From NCBI RefSeq assembly GCF_016432865.1, contig NC_067398.1:725834001-725898000 (forward strand): DNA of 64,000 nt. The letters run 5' to 3'. Made by a program: the position numbers and the translations under genes. Below are positions 1 through 52,739 of this stretch, in pieces. The DNA is from Antechinus flavipes. Taxonomy: Eukaryota. Under the pieces are notes generated by a model, which was not told the origin of the DNA, made no database searches, and saw only the letters and a list, made by a program, of their open reading frames with translations. Within the stretch, counting starts at the first letter, position 1. Every line of letters starts with the position of its first letter.

Positions 1-1749
1 GTATAGGAAGTAGCTAAGAAACAGCAGCCGGAGAAAGGATACATGGAGATCATGTACCAGACGGCTCGGAATGGAGGAACTCGGCCGCTGGAAGGGAGGT
101 AGCTCAGCCAGCGCAGAGAGCTCCAGGTCTCATCCCGGGGGAAGTTTGCCGAGTCTGTAGGGTAGCAAGTAGAGACAGAGGCGAGAGGCCCCTCTCTTGT
201 CAGCTTCTTCCCGGAACCTGGAGCTCCCTGCAGCACCCGAGGGAAGCTGGCGCCCCCAGCTCCGTCCTCCAGCGCCCGAGCAGCTTGAAGAGACTGTCTC
301 AAGAAGAGCGCGCTCCTGCTCCTCACACGGGCCTGGGCACAGGAAGCCCCCCTCGGGGCTCGGGGCGCGGGTGAGGTCCTCCCGGGACAAAGCTGCCGCA
401 GAGATGCTGGAACAGTCCCCAGACTCAGAAATATACCGCGGAAACACAAGCGTCGGGGACTTTCCTCGCCTCCCAGGCCGTCCTCCTTTGGTACTGTTGC
501 CCTTAGAATAGACCAGGGCCCACTGACAGGCAGCAGACAAGCGTCAGAGGCCGCCACAGCGACAACAGAGCACGCTCAGCTCCCGGAGCCATCCTGCTTT
601 CTGTCCCGCGAGCCTTTTCGTGCCCTGCACGAGGGCGCGCTGGGGCCGTCCCTGTTTTGTTTTGTTTTTGTTTTTAGCAAAGACACTGAAGCGCTTCAGA
701 TTAAGCCTTGCGGGGGTCTCATAGCCAGAGCCGGAGATTCCGCCCGGGTTTTCTGTCCGCTGCAGCGCCGCCTAGTGGTCCCGCATAGCTAGCCAGCTGT
801 CACAGTGGTGCTAGGGATAGACCCACAAAATCAGCGCATCAGTGGCAGAGACGCGAACCCGCGGACAAAGCGACTGCTGCGACCCCGCGGAGCGGCCCAA
901 ACCCCCCTCGAAGGCACGGGCGGCTCCTCCAGCGTGAGGAGTTCAGCCGCATTTCACACGTGCTCCCTTAAGGCGCGGGTCAGACGCCTTCAGGTTTCCC
1001 CAGGACATCCCGTAGCCGGGGCTCTCAGCTCCCACCTGCGCTGCCCGGCAGGACCCCCAGCTTGCCCACCCCTGGCTGGCGGCCGGCAGGGCCTTCCTGC
1101 TGTGGGGATCTTTCCCTTGGAGGCTCTGGCAGCCTTGGACCGGGCTTAGTTCTTCTCCACAGGATGCAGACTAAGCCAGTCATTGCCCGAAGCAATGGGA
1201 CAGTCAATGAAGGGGGACGGTCCCTAGGTCCTGCAGTTCCTAAGGAACAGGGGCTGGCCGGGGCTTCCTTTGAGAAATGATGAAGGGCCTTTCGCGCTCT
1301 TACGCGGCTTCCATCTTTCCACCCAGATATTCCAGCCAGGTGCCCGAGCGCAGGAGTCAATCAGCGAGCATGTATTGTGCCAGGCACTGTGCTAAGCGCC
1401 GGGGACACAAGCAAGAATGAAAGGACAGAACCTGGCCGAGGGAACGAGAAGAGACGGGAAAGAGTGACCGGCGGCCCCCCGGAGGACCCCTGAATGGGCT
1501 GCGATCTGCCCTAGAGGAGAGACTTTCCATTATCCAGTTCACATGAAGGGCACATTTATTTATAACTTGCTTCCCCAAAGATACAGGTAGGGTCGCGCAG
1601 GCCCAGGACCAGGGCAGGAGCGGGGTAGGGTCTCAGCCGGGAGGAGTTCATTTCCAGTCCGTCCGCGCTGCAGAGACAAGAGAAGCAGTAGGATTCAATG
1701 CATGTGCACGCCCTCCGAGGCCAAGGACTACCTTTCCCAGAAGGGAGGG

Positions 1750-2400
1750 AGTGGAGGCTACGGGCGGGTTTCCGGCAGGTCTCCATGGCAACGGCACTTC
1801 CGCCCCTTAACTGGCATACCCATCCTAGTCCAGCCTGTCAGCCTCGGTTCTGTTTCGTCCGCAGCCGTCGCCAGGGCTCGAGCCTTCCGGGGTAAGTGGG
1901 AGCCGGGCCCGGGGCCGGAACCAAGCAGACGGGAAAACCGGGTTGGTTCCGGGCGCCCGGCACCTGTTTTCCAGACCAACAAAGAGGAAAAGTGGGCGTG
2001 GTGTGGGGGGGACTTAGAGAAGTGCCGGCCCTGAGGCAGCTGCGCCTGCGCAGTCCGGTACCTAGCACCACTTCTAGCACCGCCCTTAGCCCATCCTTCG
2101 GCGACAAAGCGTTTCCACTGGCTGATTCCTAGGCCCTAGGAGCCAATCAAAGACTTTGCTGCTTCCCCGCCCCTCCTCATGGGAGAATAGGTGTGGAGCA
2201 AAAGGAACAAAGACTAGGAGGGTCCATGGAGCAGCGACACCGCTGATTGGCTTCGATGGCCCTAGGCTGTCCAATGGGCTCGCTGGGCGAGGACGGGGAC
2301 TACAGACCTCCCCGAGGCGGCTCTGTGTGAGAGTTACTGCCCTGCTCCCCCACCTGCTGTGGCTCCCCAGTGCCTCAGGAGAGACCCGTGTCCCATAGAC
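1750..2400 (+). promoter_or_regulatory. CpG-island promoter of ZNF-A (island extends over about 1-3300)
   Basis: CpG-rich; NRF1-like TGCGCCTGCGCA 2041-2052; CCAAT boxes at 2143-2147, 2246-2250 (reverse) and 2271-2275; lies directly upstream of the ZNF-A start exon. Confidence 0.7.
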
Positions 2401-2779
2401 CGCCAGCGCCAGCGCCCTTCTCTCTGGGCATCCCACACTGCCCCCTCTTCTTCCTGCTGTGGCTCCCTGATGCCCTGTCGGACCCCAGTGCTAGCCTCCT
2501 TTTATCAGGTCATCAATCACTGTCCCCTTCCTCTACCCGCTTGGGCCCCCCAGTGCCTTAGGAGAGACCCCAGTCCCCGCTGACATCCAGGGCCAGCCCC
2601 CTCTCCCTGGGCACCTCCCATGACACGTTCCCCACACGTCCTTGGCACCCACATAGCCAGGAGGCGTATCCCGCGTTTGCCTGCGGTGCTGGGGGTGGGG
2701 GGTGGGCACATGCTACCGCCTTTGTCATGGCTCCTTTCCCTTCTCAGCTCTGCTCTGGCCCCAGAGGAGGAGGCCGGCC

Positions 2780-2803
2780 ATGGCGCCCGTGCTGCAGACC
2801 CCG
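2780..2803 (+). CDS. ZNF-A first coding exon (MAPVLQTP); exon probably 2748-2803
   Basis: Acceptor ttcccttctcAG at 2746-2747; ggccATGG start; phase-0 donor CCG|GTGAGT matches the phase-0 KRAB-A acceptor. Confidence 0.75.
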
Positions 2804-2860
2804 GTGAGTCACCGGCTGTCGTCCTGCGGCTTCCTGGAGTCTAGGACGCTGCGTGGAGCG

Positions 2861-3253
2861 CCGCCAGGGGGTGCTGTCAGAGGGTGCTGTCAGAGAACGC
2901 CACCAGGGGGCGCTGTCAGGGGCACTGCCAAGGAGGAGCTGCAGGGCAGCTGTCAGGGGGCGCTATGGGGGACACTGCCAAAGGAGCCGTGGAAAGCACT
3001 GTGGGGGTTGCCACCAGGGGGCGCCATCAGGGGGCGCTGTCAGGGGTGCTCTCCGGGAGGTTGCTGCCAGGGGGCGCTGTCAGGGGGCGCTGCCAGGGGG
3101 CGCTGTCAGAGGATGCTGTCAGGGGGTGCTCTCCGGGAGGTTGCTGCCAGGGGGCGCTGTCAGGGGGTGCTCTCCGGGAGGTTGCTGCCAGGGGGTGCCA
3201 TCAGGGGGCGCTGTCAGGGGGTGCTCTCCGGGAGGTTGCTGCCAGGGGTGCCA
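2861..3253 (+). repeat. GC-rich tandem repeat (13-bp core CAGGGGGCGCTGT) forming a CTCF-motif array
   Basis: 14 copies of AGGGGG(C/T)GC in one orientation; exact CCACCAGGGGGCGC at 2900-2913 and 3011-3024; higher-order unit of about 41 bp toward the 3' end. Confidence 0.85.
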
Positions 3254-3527
3254 TTTGAGAGCTGCCCCTCAGTCTGGTGGGTGAAGGTTTCCCTGGGTGG
3301 GGGGCACGCCGCAGGCCTGAGCTCCCAGCCCCTCCACCTTGACCAGAGGCCCTGGGGCGGCGCAGCTGCTTGGAGGGAGGCAAGGTCTGCTGTGGAGTCC
3401 CGTTTCCCAGGGAGGGCCGCAGTTCAGCGTCCTGCCTCCGGTGCCCCTTGTCCCCAGTGATGGAGCCAGCACTTGGGGGGAAGCAGAAAGATGGTCTCCA
3501 GCTCAAGACCAGCCTTTGGTGTTTTAG

Positions 3528-4045
<518 letters not shown>

Positions 4046-4339
4046 GTGAGTGAGGTGCCCTGGCAGCAGGAGGCCCCGCTTCGGGGATGGGGCACGACCC
4101 TGGCAGAATGGTCCTGCTGCTTCCCGTGAGCACCTTGTGCCTCACCGCTGTCTCTGATTTGGTTCCCCGGGGCTGAGACTGACCCCAAATCCCCGTCCTG
4201 GGTCCTCTCCTCTCAGCTGGCACTGGGGGGCTGGTGCCGTCATTGGCTCCCCGTATCCGGGCCCAGGTCCGGGCTGCCTCTGAGCTTCCGCTGACCTCCA
4301 GGCCAGCAGTCAGGTGTGGGGTGACACTTGGAGTCATTT

Positions 4340-4680
4340 TCATTTGTTTTTGTTTTAAAATAATGATTTTTCCTGTGATTGTCGGTAGTTTGGGCTTCTT
4401 CACAGTTTGCCTATTTCTTTTTTCGGGAATGCTCCTCTTCTCTTTCAGTGTTTGGTCTCCATGTTGGCTATTGGAGCTTAATCGGACTGACTTGTCAAGA
4501 TTTTCGTTTTCAGTTAACTTTTTTCTTCTCATTTTAGCTGCATTGATTTTGATTATCCCTGAGCTTTCCAGTTTCATGTAATCCAAATTGTCCATTTTAG
4601 TCTTCTCTGTTGTTTTCTATCCCTTGTTTGGTCAAAAACTCTCCTTTCCTGTCCCTCTCATTTGTCAAGAACCCATCTGG
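4340..4680 (-). mobile_element. degenerate L1 ORF2 3' fragment
   Basis: Resembles the antisense marsupial L1 ORF2 C-terminal region (gcattgattttg...tttcatgtaatccaaattgtccatttt...tttggtcaaaaactc). Confidence 0.55.
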
Positions 4681-6871: not shown

Positions 6872-8980
<2,109 letters not shown>

Positions 8981-9489: not shown

Positions 9490-9960
9490 ACTGGCATGGT
9501 AGCTTTGGGCTGCAAAGGGTCGGGGATCTTAGGAACACTTCTACAGCCAAGGGAAGCACCAGCAGAGCCAAGGGGATCAAGGTTTTTGGCAACAATTCTA
9601 AAGCCAAGGAAAGCACCAGCAGAACCAAGGGGAATGGAGGTGTTGGGCACAGTTCTAGAGCCAAGGGGAGCTGGAGTCTTGGGCACACTTCTACAGCCAA
9701 GGGGAGCAGGGGACTTGGGCACACTTCGGAGCCAAGGGGAGTACTAGCAGACCTGCAGGAGAGTGGAGGTCTTGGGCACACTTCTAGTGCGAAAAGGAGC
9801 TGGGGTCTTAGGCACACTTCTAGAATCAAGGAAAACACCAGCACAGCCAAGCAAAGCAGGAGTCTTGGAAACACATCTAGAGCCAAGGGGAGCGGGGGTC
9901 TTGGGCAGACTTCTAGAGCCAAGGGGAGGACCAGCAGAGCCAAGGGGAGCAGGGTTCTTG
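9490..9960 (+). repeat. 36-bp/21-bp mixed minisatellite
   Basis: Units cttctagagccaaggggagcaggggtcttgggcaca (36 bp) and gccaagggaagcaccagcaga (21 bp), both multiples of 3. Confidence 0.85.
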
Positions 9961-32260: not shown

Positions 32261-33009
32261 GAAAGCCAGAAGGACAGCTCAGGCAGTGGAAGGGCACAAT
32301 CACCTATGTGAGAATAACCTGGTCTCCTAGGATTGTCTACAGTCTTTGACAAGCTCCATCACCCTCAAAGACTGGATTATCTCTTATCCCTAATTTTCCT
32401 CACACTGGTTATCCTCCTACTTGTCTGACTGATCACTCTGCATCTTTAAGAGGGTTACACCCAATTAACAGAGAACACCGTCTAAAGTGTCTATTTGGCC
32501 CCTTTTCTCTTCTCTCTCTAGTGTGCTTACTGATCTCACAGCTCCCATGGATTTACCATCACAGATAACTCTCAGATTGACTTATCCAGCCCTTACCTTT
32601 CTCCTAGATTCACCCCTCCAACTGTTAGACATCTCAAAGCAAATGTCCTCTAAGACATCTTGAACTCAACACACCCAAAATTGAATTCACTATTTACCCT
32701 CAACAGACTGTGAGTTCTTGGTGGCAAGGACTATCTCCTGCTTTTCTTTATAATCCCAGGGTATAAAGGGCTTGATATAGTACCTAGCACATGGTAGGTG
32801 CTTAATAAATGTTTTTTGACTGACTTGAATCTCCCCTCACTTACTTTCCTCATCTCCATGAAGGACACCACCATCTTCCCAACCCCCCAAGCTTCCCAAC
32901 CTCAGAGTCATCCTAATTCCTCACTTACTCACCCCAACCCCGATTCCCATTCTCCATATCCAGTGTGGCAAAAAGGCCTGTCCGCTGGGCCTCTGCACCA
33001 TATCTGGTC

Positions 33010-33780
33010 CATTTCACTTCTGCCGCACCTCTAGTCAATGTCACCTCTGCAACATCTCTAGTCAATGTCACCTCTGCAGCACCTCTGCAACATCTCTAGT
33101 CAATGTCACTTTTGCAGCACCTCTGGTCCGTTTTACCTTTGTAACATCTCTAGTCAATGTCACTTCTGATCCATTTCACCTCTGTATAATCTCTAGTCAA
33201 TGTCACTTCTGATCCATTTCACCTCTGTATAATCTCTAGTCAATGTCACTTCTGATCCATTTCACCTCTGTATAATCTCTAGTCAATGTCATCTCTGCAG
33301 CACCTCTGCAACATCTCTAGTCAATGTCACCTCTGCAGCACCTCTGCAACACCTCTAGTCAATGTCACTTTTGCAGCACCTCTGGTCTGTTTTACCTTTG
33401 TAACATCTCTAGTCAATGTCACCTCTGATCCATTTCACCTCTGTATAATTTCTAGTCAATGTCACCTCTTCAGTACCTCTGCAACACCTTTAGTCTATGT
33501 CATCTCTGCAACACGTTTAGTCAACATCATCTCTGGTCCATTTCACCTCTGTATTATCTCTAGTTAATGTCATTTCTGCAGCACTTCTGGTCCACTTCAC
33601 CTCTGCAACATATCTATCAAGGTCACTTCTGCAGCACCTCTATAAGGCCTTTAGTCAATGTCATTTCTTTTTTTTTTTTAATTTTTATTTAATAATTACT
33701 TTATATTGACAGAATCCATGCCAGGGAGTCAATGTCATTTCTGCAGCACCTCTGGTCCATTTCACCTCTGTAACATCTCC
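33010..33780. repeat. complex tandem repeat in ZNF-B 5' intron
   Basis: About 16 copies of (tc)tagtcaatgtca interleaved with cacctctgca(g/a)ca; three near-identical 43-bp units at about 33146-33280. Confidence 0.88.
33668..33726 (-). mobile_element. 59-bp L1 3' tail inserted into the tandem repeat
   Basis: poly(T) + ttatattgacagaatccatgccaggg; 15-bp TSD AGTCAATGTCATTTC at 33653-33667 and 33727-33741. Confidence 0.88.
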
Positions 33781-50632: not shown

Positions 50633-52739
50633 CTACCCGATCTGTGCAACAACGCGGAGAACACAGCGGCCGGCGGCCACTACCCCGTACTACAACATCC
50701 CCCTGACAGCGGAGGTCAGGACACCAGCTGCGGCAACTCAGAGCCGGCCCTGCCTGATCTCGAGGCTGCGCTGAGCCAGGAGAACGGACGCCATCCCGAC
50801 ACTTTACATCTTCTCCGGAGGGCAATCCTTCCACCCCTCCTGGAAATCTCTCCTGGAAAAACCTTCTTGTCCCTCCCCCAAGCTCCAAGCCCCCCTTCCC
50901 TACCCGCTGCCTCCCCCTCCTCCTTCACCCACGGCAGGAAGGGCGGGCCCTTCTCCCTGCTCCAGTGATCCCCTCCCCCCAACAGCTCAGCTGATCCCTC
51001 TCTCCCCACCGCGGCCTCCTTCCCCTGAGGAGACTGTTTCTGACAGAACCGACCCGTGCCAGGCTCTGCAGTCTGGCTCCGTCACCCCCTGCTCTCTCCA
51101 AAGCTTCCAACGGCCTCTCAGCCCTCGGTCGTCTCCATGTGCTCGGCCCGGGCTTCTCCAGCGGAGGTCTCTGGGACGTGGCTTTTCCACAGCCCCTCCC
51201 GGTGCGGCCCAATCACTTCCCAAGGGCCGACTGACGGTCGGGGCCGAGCCGAGCAGGCTCTGGGAATCCCCGGCTCAAGCCGGCCGCTCTCTGCGCCTCG
51301 TGTCTCCCCGACCGTCCCTCCTGGTTCTGCTTCCTTTCGGATGTGACCGAGCCCTCGGTTCCGGGCTCACCTTTAAAGCGCCCCTGGTGCCCGGGGCTCC
51401 CCTGAAGAACACGCTGTGCCCTGTCCCCCCGGCGCTCTGGGAGTCCGCACTCTCTAACGCCCCCCGCCCCCCGAGATGCCAGGGCCCCCCTCAGAAGGGG
51501 CTCAGAAAGACTCTGCCTTCGGAGGAGACGTTCACAAGGCCCCACGGCTGCCTTCTCGCCGTTGTATCTCCTTCCTCCTTCACCGAGTCTCTCAAAGACA
51601 CAACCCCCGGTGCTCAGGAGGTGGGATCCCGGGCGCAGGGAGCGGCCGGTCTGGCGCCACATCCCTCCCCAGCCGGCCAGAACCGACCCAGCCTCCGCAG
51701 CAAAAGGGAGCGTTTCTGCAGCGCCTAAAGGCCCGAAGCACGTCCCCAGCATCAGGTCAGCGCCAATCTCCCTGGTCCCCTCCGCCTACCTGGATGCGGA
51801 TGCCCTCTGCGCTCCTTCTGTCTCCCCGGGGGCCGCATCGTGCCCCTTAACTGAGGCTGCTCCCCAAAAGTCTGAGGCCCGAGGCCGGCGGGTCTCACGG
51901 CCTCTGCCCCCGCTTTCCAGGGGAGTGCTCGGGGTGCTGGACCCTCCAGGAGCCCTGGCCCCCAGCCCGGCTTCTGGCTCCCCGGGGCCGGGAGGATCCT
52001 CCCAAGGACGGGCTGGCTTCCGGCTGCAGCGGAGGAAGCTCCTCCACCTCCTCTCAGCTTCCTCCCAAGCACCCGAGGCTCTGTCCAAAGGCCAGTGACC
52101 TCCTACCCGAGGATGGGGGGGCTGGGTGACATAGTGCCCAGAGCCCCCCCCGATTCAGGAGCACCTGAGCCCAATACTGAGACTGTGACCCCGGGCACTT
52201 CGCCCCAACCGCCTCAAAAAAAGGGGGGGGAGGCAGAAGCTGGGTGACACGTTCCCAAAGGAAAGCTCTGGGGGCGAGGGGGGTCTTCATGAATCATGTG
52301 TTAAACAGCTCAGGCGGGGCGTCCTCGGCGGAGGTCAGGGAGGGGCTCCAGGGGAGGAGACCAGGACAGACGGAGGGGGCGTGGGCTGCAGGGCCCCCGG
52401 CTGGCCAGGGCGGAGAGGGTGAAGGTCAGACCCCCCCCCCCCATTCTCAGCTGTAGGGCTGTCCCTGAATTTTGGGCAGGCTGCTCCTGGAGGAAAACGC
52501 CCTCCTCCCCATTAATGCCGATGGCCCCCTGCCAAGCCCCCTAGGAGGATGTGACCAGGGAAGCTCCGAGCCTCTGGAAGCCCCCTCCCCATCAATGCCA
52601 GGGGTCCCTCCCGCGCCTCTAGAGAGCAGAGACTGCTTCCTGAGGAACAGGTGCTTAATCGTCTCGCCGGGACCCGGAACCGGCGCCAAAAGACCCAAGA
52701 GGGGCTCCCACCCCGACACGGGCCCACGACCTCACTCAC

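What the first reader, a model, noticed from the sequence alone, without database searches (positions are those of the whole stretch)
2861..3253. Tandem array of CTCF-consensus motifs in ZNF-A intron 1
Seen: about 390 bp built from a 13-bp unit CAGGGGGCGCTGT, with 14 same-orientation AGGGGG(C/T)GC cores and two exact CCACCAGGGGGCGC matches (2900-2913, 3011-3024). It sits between the start exon and KRAB-A, and many CpGs are retained. Established: this is the CTCF core consensus; CTCF binding is orientation-dependent and CpG-methylation-sensitive; clustered sites act as insulators at loci such as the H19 ICR and DXZ4. Inference: a repeat-expanded, possibly methylation-switchable boundary or loop anchor at the edge of a KZFP cluster, perhaps shielding the promoter from gene-body H3K9me3. 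It may vary in copy number between individuals.
Basis: partly seen in the sequence, partly recalled or inferred. Interest (0 to 1): 0.72.

Follow-up and report, generated by a model that had tools for sequence, protein, structure and literature searches.

The report
Intron minisatellite carrying CTCF-type motifs
A real 390-bp G-rich tandem repeat in the 5' intron of a marsupial KRAB zinc-finger gene carries five good, same-direction matches to the CTCF binding motif, so it may bind this chromatin-loop protein, but it looks like an ordinary young minisatellite of a known kind, not a special methylation-switched boundary.

Summary
All 14 AGGGGG(C/T)GC cores in the 64-kb window lie on the + strand inside 2861-3253. 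Exact CCACCAGGGGGCGC sits at 2900 and 3011, and TRF calls a 13-bp unit with 41/80-bp higher-order repeats.

Only part of the array is CTCF-grade.
- 5 sites are strong (p<=5e-6).
- 4 are borderline.
- 5 plain CTGTCAGGGGG(C/T)GC units fail, because the 13-bp unit drops the CCA half of the motif.

- The repeat's CpG falls at core positions 12-13, which are methylation-insensitive in vitro. Only one site has the sensitive C2pG3.
- The array sits on a CpG-island shore (CpG o/e 0.36).
- By earlier scan notes, KZFP genes continue at least 52 kb upstream, so this is not the cluster edge.

Contigs from four related organisms hold the array with rearranged joints. In two of them a C>T change hits the key cytosine of the best site.

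Best reading: a lineage-specific minisatellite, probably grown from a CTCF-type site, with likely but untested CTCF binding at a few units. The scan has already noted at least five similar arrays in this genome. Interest is low to moderate.

The parts
2861..3253 (+). Whole G-rich minisatellite: 13-bp unit CAGGGGGYGCYRT plus a 27-bp variant unit. GC is 71% and GC skew is about +0.27.
2861..3013 (+). Older, decayed left block of the array (about 67% unit identity). Holds sites 2858 and 2897.
3014..3248 (+). Younger right block with 41- and 80-bp higher-order repeats (81-91% identity). It starts at the best CTCF-type site.
3008..3026 (+). Best CTCF-type site, TTGCCACCAGGGGGCGCCA: 24.7 bits, p 3e-10. 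Its core C2 (3012) reads T in organism D and in one contig of organism C.
2897..2915 (+). Second exact-core site: 21.6 bits, p 2e-8.
3021..3039 (+). CCATC-type site: 15.9 bits, p 2e-6. It lies 13 bp from site 3008, so the two cannot both be occupied.
3195..3213 (+). CCATC-type site: 16.2 bits, p 1.6e-6.
2858..2876 (+). CCGCC-type site: 14.5 bits, p 5e-6. It is the only site with a CpG at the methylation-sensitive core positions 2-3.
   Evidence: PMC10484683
3061..3200 (+). Four borderline CTGCC-type sites starting at 3061, 3087, 3141 and 3182 (9.1-12.2 bits, p 1.6e-5 to 7.3e-5). All lack C2.
2780..2803 (+). Coding part of the ATG exon (MAPVLQTP), with donor GT at 2804. A candidate acceptor AG lies at 2746-2747.
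   Evidence: read directly
2804..3527 (+). 724-nt intron that holds the array. The array starts 57 nt after the donor and ends 274 nt before the acceptor.
   Evidence: read directly; the reading frame joins across it
3528..3654 (+). 127-nt KRAB-A exon.
   Evidence: Pfam KRAB, E 1.1e-26
6953..8980 (+). Terminal exon of the same gene: a lineage-specific spacer plus 18 C2H2 fingers.
1..2300 (.). CpG island (GC at least 0.55, CpG o/e at least 0.6) upstream of the array. The array lies on its downstream shore.
763..781 (-). Opposite-strand CTCF-type motif (16.5 bits) inside the CpG island. Together with the array it gives a divergent '<>>>' pattern.
   Evidence: PMC7422557 for the grammar

Best explanation
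This is a lineage-specific, GC-rich minisatellite with its G-rich strand on the sense strand. It fills about half of the short intron between the ATG exon and the KRAB-A exon of an intact 18-finger KRAB zinc-finger gene, just downstream of the gene's CpG island.

Shown:
- It is built from a 13-bp unit, CAGGGGGCGCTGT, which equals the 3' two-thirds of a CTCF core.
- The unit is shorter than the 15-19-bp motif, so a unit scores as a full site only where the preceding unit happens to end in CCA(C/T). That leaves 5 strong sites, 4 borderline sites and 5 failing units, all in one orientation.

Inferred:
- The array grew by replication slippage or unequal exchange from one or two true CTCF-type sites. 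The two perfect matches sit in the old block and at the left edge of the young block.
- CTCF probably occupies up to about five or six non-overlapping sites when this island shore is accessible. In that case it acts as an ordinary promoter-proximal, forward-facing CTCF cluster that points into the gene body.
- The repeat expansion itself is a by-product of minisatellite dynamics. It is not a purpose-built, methylation-gated insulator.
For: - Counts, orientation and unit structure come.
- The per-core matrix scores show a 5 strong / 4 borderline / 5 failing split that tracks the CCA half of the motif.
- Chance alone rarely gives such strong sites. Random G-rich tandem arrays reach 21.6 bits in at most 0.003% of trials and 14.45 bits in about 0.1%. 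This fits seeding from a real site.
- The two paralogous KZFP genes in the window show no homology to the array or its intron; only the KRAB-A and KRAB-B exons match. The array is therefore gene-specific and young.
- Contigs of four coded organisms hold parts of the array. Organism B has joints that go back 74 and 283 bp, and organism C has a 104-bp skip, so the structure varies.
- The same CTCF motif and ChIP signal are documented in a marsupial, the opossum (PMC3368268).
- The period of 13 bp is not a multiple of 3, which argues against coding.
Against: - No occupancy, methylation or contact data exist for this species.
- The seed model is not proven, because no pre-expansion orthologous intron could be fetched.
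- The key cytosine C2 of the best site (3012) reads T in organism D and in one contig of organism C. The perfect site may therefore be a recent gain, not the ancestor, and it is not under visible constraint.
- In human cells, KZFP clusters are H3K9me3 domains in which CTCF motifs stay unbound until ZNF274 is removed (PMC11397430). The sites here could likewise be masked.
Confidence: 0.55

Rival explanations
1. First reader's model. The array is a selected, repeat-expanded CTCF insulator or loop anchor at the edge of the KZFP cluster. CpG methylation switches it, and it shields the promoter from gene-body H3K9me3.
For: - There are five strong and four borderline co-oriented motifs.
- A reverse motif at 763 gives the divergent '<>>' pattern that is enriched at domain boundaries (PMC7422557).
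- A moderate reverse-strand motif at 52389, near the 5' end of the convergent gene C, could serve as a loop partner 49 kb away.
- Tandem CTCF arrays such as DXZ4 and FIRRE do act as architectural elements (PMC6985041).
Against: - The CpG of the unit lies at core positions 12-13, which are methylation-insensitive in vitro. Only 1 of 14 cores has C2pG3 (PMC10484683, PMC6222495).
- KZFP genes continue upstream of the window by at least 52 kb according to scan notes, so this is not the cluster edge.
- Amplification kept the G-rich half and lost the CCA half in 9 of 14 units. That is the opposite of what selection for more binding sites would do.
- C2 of the best site varies among relatives.
- The two paralog genes in the window have no such array.
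Confidence: 0.12
2. A neutral VNTR that CTCF does not bind in vivo. The motif likeness has no consequence because the region is methylated or heterochromatic, as KZFP clusters are in human cells.
For: - CpG o/e is 0.36 and 5 of 14 cores have decayed from CG to TG, a sign of germline methylation on the island shore.
- Human KZFP clusters exclude CTCF until ZNF274/H3K9me3 is lost (PMC11397430).
- The scan has noted at least five other CTCF-like minisatellites in this genome. Roughly 0.1% of random G-rich arrays reach 14.45 bits.
Against: - Two sites at 21.6 and 24.7 bits are much better than random arrays give (at most 0.003%).
- Sites that strong, next to a CpG-island promoter, are usually occupied in mammals (own knowledge).
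- In human KZFP genes the H3K9me3 lies mainly over the 3' finger exons, not the 5' ends (own knowledge).
Confidence: 0.23
3. The sense-strand G-runs are what matters, not CTCF. They could act as intronic G-run splicing enhancers (hnRNP F/H) that help define the tiny ATG exon and this short GC-rich intron. Or they could be part of the promoter-proximal GC skew that favours R-loops and G-quadruplexes on the non-template strand.
For: - Sixteen G5 runs lie on the sense strand and none on the other strand.
- The array is the most G4Hunter-positive 393-bp stretch of the window (0.97). The next two highest stretches are sense-strand G-rich 5' regions of the other two KZFP genes.
- Non-template G-richness in first introns is a known general feature (PMC2275096).
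- Intronic hnRNP F/H sites stimulate splicing (PMC1326234).
Against: - The loops between G5 runs are 8 nt, so no canonical G3+N1-7 quadruplex motif is present. Four appear only if loops of up to 12 nt are allowed.
- G4Hunter 0.97 is below the usual 1.2-1.5 threshold.
- The paralogs manage without such a repeat.
- G-runs alone do not explain the exact 14-bp CTCF matches.
Confidence: 0.1

Closest known systems
SLC6A4 Stin2 intron-2 VNTR (16-17-bp units), bound and modulated by CTCF (PMC2848977)
   Same: Both are short-unit, GC-rich, copy-number-variable minisatellites in a 5' intron with CTCF-type sites in the units.
   Different: Stin2 has ChIP and reporter evidence, and this array has none. 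The host here is a marsupial KZFP gene. The two perfect core matches here are stronger than the loose Stin2 matches.
X-linked CTCF-binding tandem repeats DXZ4, FIRRE and ICCE (PMC6985041, PMC3491370)
   Same: Both are tandem arrays of co-oriented CTCF motifs that evolve quickly in sequence and copy number.
   Different: Those are macrosatellites, or arrays tens to hundreds of kb long, with one motif per kb-scale unit and proven allele-specific binding and superloops. This is a 0.4-kb autosomal intronic minisatellite whose unit is shorter than the motif.
H19/IGF2 imprinting control region CTCF sites
   Same: Both have several CTCF sites clustered within repeated sequence near a promoter.
   Different: Binding at the H19 sites is blocked by methylation of the CpG at core positions 2-3 (PMC10484683). 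Here 13 of 14 cores have no CpG there; their CpG lies at positions 12-13.
Latent CTCF sites inside human KZFP clusters, unmasked on ZNF274 loss (PMC11397430)
   Same: Both are CTCF-motif sites embedded within a KRAB-ZNF gene cluster.
   Different: The human sites are single motifs defined by ChIP-seq gain. No chromatin data exist here, and the motif is repeat-amplified.
Other CTCF-motif minisatellites noted by this scan in the same genome (s1-198796, s1-217929, s1-208930, s1-192108, s1-211376)
   Same: They share the species, the kind of object (co-oriented CTCF-like motifs in a young tandem repeat, mostly intronic) and the untested status.
   Different: Those have units of 49-66 bp that hold a whole motif each. 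Here the unit is 13 bp, so most units hold only a partial motif.

Membership tests
CTCF binding-site cluster / insulator | Match to the CTCF core motif (CCASYAGRKGGCRSY; JASPAR MA0139-type matrix) | tested here: met
   Five sites reach p<=5e-6, two of them at 21.6 and 24.7 bits. Four are borderline and five of the 14 cores fail.
CTCF binding-site cluster / insulator | Common orientation of the clustered sites | tested here: met
   All 14 cores and all 9 matrix hits are on the + strand under the uniform background. Only two weak reverse-strand hits appear under the window-composition background.
CTCF binding-site cluster / insulator | In vivo occupancy by CTCF and cohesin | not testable with these tools
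   No ChIP or CUT&Tag data could be reached. The runs found are genomic contigs.
CTCF binding-site cluster / insulator | Boundary, loop-anchor or enhancer-blocking activity | not testable with these tools
   No Hi-C or Micro-C data are available. Only motif grammar can be described: 763(-), the array (+), and 52389(-).
CTCF binding-site cluster / insulator | Evolutionary retention of the key motif bases | tested here: inconclusive
   No difference was reported at site 2897 in the four runs, which were laid from contigs, so this does not prove identity. C2 of the best site (3012) is T in organism D and in one contig of organism C, and 3199 C>T occurs in one contig of C. Unitig contigs break inside the repeat.
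Methylation-switched CTCF site (H19-ICR type) | CpG at core positions 2-3, where methylation blocks binding | tested here: not met
   Only site 2858 (CCGCC) has it. Nine of 14 cores have their CpG at positions 12-13, where methylation does not reduce binding in vitro (PMC10484683, PMC6222495).
Minisatellite / VNTR | Head-to-tail units of about 10-100 bp | tested here: met
   TRF gives period 13 with 41/80-bp higher-order periods.
Minisatellite / VNTR | Length or structure differs between individuals or close species | tested here: inconclusive
   Contig joints go back 74 and 283 bp in organism B, and skip 2964-3067 in organism C. Depth over 2884-2971 in C is about 4 times the flank depth. No read spans the array, so lengths are unknown.
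CpG island | GC at least 0.55 and CpG o/e at least 0.6 | tested here: not met
   The array has GC 0.71 but CpG o/e 0.36. The island proper is 1 to about 2300.
Canonical G-quadruplex motif | Four G3+ runs with loops of 1-7 nt | tested here: not met
   The array holds none, because the loops are 8 nt. Four motifs appear with loops of up to 12 nt. Mean G4Hunter score is 0.95-0.97.

The most novel reading that the evidence does not exclude
The array is a genus-specific, copy-number-variable cluster of CTCF sites. With the opposite-facing site at 763, it forms a divergent boundary at the 5' end of ZNF-A. It loops to the reverse-strand motif at 52389 at the 5' end of the convergent gene C, and so encloses three KZFP genes in one domain of about 50 kb. 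Differences in array length or unit type between Antechinus species or individuals would then tune insulation and expression of these fast-evolving repressor genes.
Probability: 0.1. Interest if true: 0.55.

Novelty: new member of a known kind. Interest (0 to 1): 0.3.

Why it matters
If CTCF binds here, this would be a compact natural example of a tandem repeat multiplying, and at the same time degrading, an architectural-protein site next to a promoter inside a rapidly evolving KZFP cluster of a marsupial. It offers a simple test series of unit types (CCACC, CCATC, CTGCC, CTGTC) for how much of the 5' half-site CTCF needs. It also offers a test of whether CpG methylation at core position 12 matters in vivo. 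As it stands, it is one more of several CTCF-like minisatellites already noted in this genome, with no functional data, so its value is mainly as a catalogue entry and a candidate for ChIP or long-read follow-up.

Tried and rejected
- **Orthologous introns through proteins.** The spacer of the terminal exon has no relatives; hits cover only the first finger. The whole exon finds only generic KZFPs at 39-66% identity. No ortholog was found, so no cross-species locus could be fetched. The joined spliced protein was not built or searched. Exons were searched apart by reference.
- **Paralog origin.** blastn of 1-4400 against the rest of the window matches only the KRAB-A and KRAB-B exons. Smith-Waterman alignment of the array flanks against the equivalent introns of genes B and C is not above shuffles (z 0.8-1.6).
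- **Coding repeat.** All three + frames are open across the array. However, periods of 13, 41 and 80 bp are not multiples of 3, and open frames are expected in A/T-poor sequence. Rejected.
- **Hairpin or cruciform.** The single strand folds worse than shuffles (z +3.9). Rejected.
- **Canonical G-quadruplex array.** Not met, because the loops are 8 nt.
- **INSM1 site array.** The unit TGTCAGGGGGCG resembles the old in-vitro INSM1 consensus as I recall it. PMC11880201 shows that INSM1 has no preference for GGGG motifs and that CTCF is the protein that recognises them. The original 2002 paper was not held. Rejected as a separate reading.
- **Look-alike stretches in earlier scan notes by sequence.** Blank.

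Full report
**1. Observation**

The stretch was read directly.
- A regex count finds AGGGGG[CT]GC 14 times in the 64-kb window. All 14 are on the + strand, all start between 2866 and 3216, and none lies elsewhere or on the - strand.
- CCACCAGGGGGCGC occurs at 2900 and 3011 only.
- CAGGGGGCGCTGT occurs six times.
- Tandem Repeats Finder reports a 13-bp period in two blocks: 2865-2964 (7.8 copies, 67% matches) and 3014-3225 (15.9 copies, 71%). Higher-order periods are 41 bp (4.8 copies, 81%) and 80 bp (2 copies, 91%).
- A unit map shows 13-bp units CAGGGGGYGCYRT and a 27-bp variant, CAGGGGGTGCTCTCCGGGAGGTTGCTG. The left third of the array is decayed.

**2. Gene context**

- ATG 2780 opens an eight-codon exon end (MAPVLQTP) with donor GT at 2804.
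- Acceptor AG at 2526-3527 region, precisely 3526-3527, is followed by a 127-nt exon, 3528-3654. This exon is in frame and is a KRAB box (Pfam E 1.1e-26).
- Homology to the two other KZFP genes of the window marks a KRAB-B exon near 3945-4073.
- The terminal exon ORF 6899-8980 carries 18 C2H2 fingers.
- The array fills 54% of the 724-nt intron 2804-3527.
- A candidate non-coding first exon ends at a GGTAAGT donor near 1890, and an acceptor lies at 2746-2747. 'Intron 1' may therefore be intron 2. No RNA evidence was available.
- Positions 1-2300 meet CpG-island criteria. The array does not (GC 0.71, CpG o/e 0.36), so it lies on the island's downstream shore.
- Earlier scan notes name the genome as the marsupial Antechinus flavipes. 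I did not verify this.

**3. How CTCF-like is it?**

Its consensus, TGGCCACCAGGGGGCGCTA, is as expected, but this is not a tool-supplied matrix. Exact p-values were computed by dynamic programming.

With a uniform background, nine + strand hits in the array pass p<1e-4.
- Five are strong: 3008 (24.7 bits, 3e-10), 2897 (21.6 bits, 2e-8), 3195 (16.2 bits), 3021 (15.9 bits) and 2858 (14.5 bits).
- Four CTGCC-type sites are borderline: 3061 and 3141 (12.2 bits, 1.6e-5), 3087 (9.2 bits) and 3182 (9.1 bits).
- The plain unit junction CTGTCAGGGGG(C/T)GC, present at five of the 14 cores, fails (p 2e-4 to 2e-3).

The cause is structural. The 13-bp unit supplies core positions 5-15, and positions 1-4 come from the tail of the preceding unit. 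Only tails that end in CCA(C/T) or CCGC restore the near-invariant C2. Nine of the 14 cores have T at C2.

Under a background matched to the array's own composition, four sites still pass. Dinucleotide shuffles of the array give 0.02 hits of at least 14.4 bits, against 5 seen.

Sites 3008 and 3021 are 13 bp apart and cannot be co-occupied. By spacing, at most about six molecules could bind at once. This last point is inference.

**4. Chance and origin**

- Simulated random tandem arrays with this composition reach 14.45 bits in about 0.1% of cases and 21.6 bits in at most 0.003%.
- Weakly CTCF-like minisatellites are therefore expected by the dozen in a mammalian genome, but two perfect cores are not.
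- The perfect cores sit in the old block (2897) and exactly at the left edge of the young block (3008).
- This fits a model in which one or two true CTCF-type sites seeded slippage of their G-rich half.
- The model is inferred, not shown. The array and its intron have no homology to the equivalent introns of the two paralogs in the window, and I could not fetch an orthologous intron.

**5. Relatives**

Twenty public runs hold part of 2400-3700, and five hold at least half of its sampled words. I laid the contigs of four coded organisms, A to D, on the stretch.
- All four cover the right flank. There are 2 differences in 394 nt in A, and 4-5 plus indels in B and C.
- All four cover parts of the array, and the contigs break inside it.
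- Organism B shows joints that go back 74 bp and 283 bp.
- Organism C shows a form that skips 2964-3067. Its depth over 2884-2971 is about four times the flank depth.
- These are signs of a different repeat structure, but no record spans the array, so lengths are unknown.
- At 3012, which is C2 of the best site, organism D and one contig of C read T. At 3199, which is C2 of site 3195, one contig of C reads T.
- The best sites are therefore not visibly constrained. No difference was reported for site 2897, but these are contigs, so that does not prove identity.

**6. The three interpretive claims**

(a) Methylation switch.
- Structural work reviewed in PMC6222495 and restated in PMC10484683 shows that CTCF binding is blocked by methylation of the CpG at core positions 2-3. 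Full methylation at positions 12-13 slightly enhances binding.
- In this array the unit's CpG is at positions 12-13 in 9 of 14 cores, and five have decayed to TG. Only site 2858 has C2pG3.
- In vivo, differential binding correlates with methylation at both positions (cited in PMC10484683), so an indirect effect is not excluded. A direct switch is not supported.

(b) Edge of the cluster.
- Earlier notes place four KRAB-ZNF genes from 9 kb to about 52 kb upstream of the window, and two more lie downstream within it.
- The array is inside the cluster.

(c) Shielding from H3K9me3.
- This is untestable here.
- In human cells, CTCF is excluded from KZFP clusters by ZNF274-dependent H3K9me3 and appears only when that is lost (PMC11397430). 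This makes masking as likely as shielding.

**7. What can be said for a boundary**

- A reverse-strand motif at 763 (16.5 bits) inside the island, followed by the forward array, gives the divergent '<>>' pattern that is enriched at domain boundaries (PMC7422557).
- The forward array faces the gene body.
- A moderate reverse-strand motif at 52389 (13.4 bits) lies at the 5' end of the convergent gene C.
- This gives a concrete, testable loop prediction, but it is speculation.

**8. Other readings**

- The G-runs all lie on the sense, non-template strand. The array is the most G4Hunter-positive 393-bp stretch in the window (0.97). The next two are sense-strand G-rich 5' regions of genes B and C. 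This matches the general non-template G-richness of first introns (PMC2275096).
- Loops of 8 nt fail the canonical quadruplex pattern, and the single strand folds worse than shuffles.
- A role as intronic G-run splicing enhancers (PMC1326234) is possible but untested.
- A coding reading is rejected because of the 13-bp period.
- The resemblance of TGTCAGGGGGCG to the old INSM1 consensus adds nothing. INSM1 lacks that specificity, and CTCF is the binder of such motifs (PMC11880201).

**9. Comparison and novelty**

- CTCF-binding tandem repeats are known at several scales: the SLC6A4 Stin2 intron VNTR (PMC2848977), DXZ4/FIRRE/ICCE (PMC6985041, PMC3491370) and a tRNA VNTR (PMC4041453).
- CTCF binding has been mapped by ChIP in a marsupial, the opossum, where motif-word usage is largely conserved across mammals and the CTCF-bound SINEs carry the M1 motif (PMC3368268).
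- This scan has already noted at least five CTCF-like minisatellites in this same genome, on other DNA.
- The one distinctive point here is that the unit is shorter than the motif, so the expansion mostly multiplied half-sites.
- This is a new member of a known kind.

Noticed in passing
window 763-781 (-): A CTCF-type motif on the opposite strand (GGACCACTAGGCGGCGCTG, 16.5 bits, p 1.4e-6) lies inside the CpG island about 2.1 kb upstream of the array. Together they form a divergent pair.
   Followed up: partly
window 52389-52407 (-): A moderate reverse-strand CTCF-type motif (13.4 bits) lies between two CpG-island pieces at the 5' end of the convergent KZFP gene C. It is a possible convergent partner for the array, 49 kb away.
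   Followed up: no
window 50699-50710 (-): The 12-mer GCTGTCAGGGGG, typical of the array, occurs once outside it. That copy is on the sense strand of gene C's equivalent intron, about 170 nt before its KRAB-A exon. About 0.05 matches are expected per window. The flanks are not homologous, so it may be a remnant seed or a coincidence.
   Followed up: partly
window 32990-33668: Gene B, on the minus strand, has an unrelated and less GC-rich minisatellite (27/38/43-bp units, CACCTCTGCAACATCTCTAGTCAATGT) about 1 kb upstream of its KRAB-A exon. Its exon structure there was not worked out, so the host intron is not established. Two of the three KZFP genes here thus carry a minisatellite in the 5' region upstream of KRAB-A.
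   Followed up: no
window 2702-3460 (+): The frame of the ATG at 2780 stays open through the donor site and the whole array until 3460, and the other two + frames are open over the array as well. Retaining the intron would give a Gly/Arg/Cys-rich product of about 227 residues without a KRAB domain. This is probably just the lack of stop codons in A/T-poor sequence.
   Followed up: partly
window 9534-9960 and 3793-3900: More tandem repeats lie in and beside ZNF-A. Units of 36/57/93 bp (AGAGCCAAGGGGAGC...) sit just after the finger exon, and a 54-bp unit repeated about twice sits between the KRAB-A and KRAB-B exons.
   Followed up: no
window 6953-7430 (+): The roughly 160-residue spacer between the KRAB domain and the fingers of ZNF-A has no detectable relative in the 5.8-billion-protein word search. 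No protein is more than 66% identical to the whole exon. This looks like a lineage-specific KZFP without a recognisable ortholog in annotated marsupials.
   Followed up: partly
window 2884-2971, run X4 (organism C): Contig depth is about 100-125, against about 26 in the single-copy flank. This part of the array is either several-fold amplified in organism C or present elsewhere in its genome.
   Followed up: no
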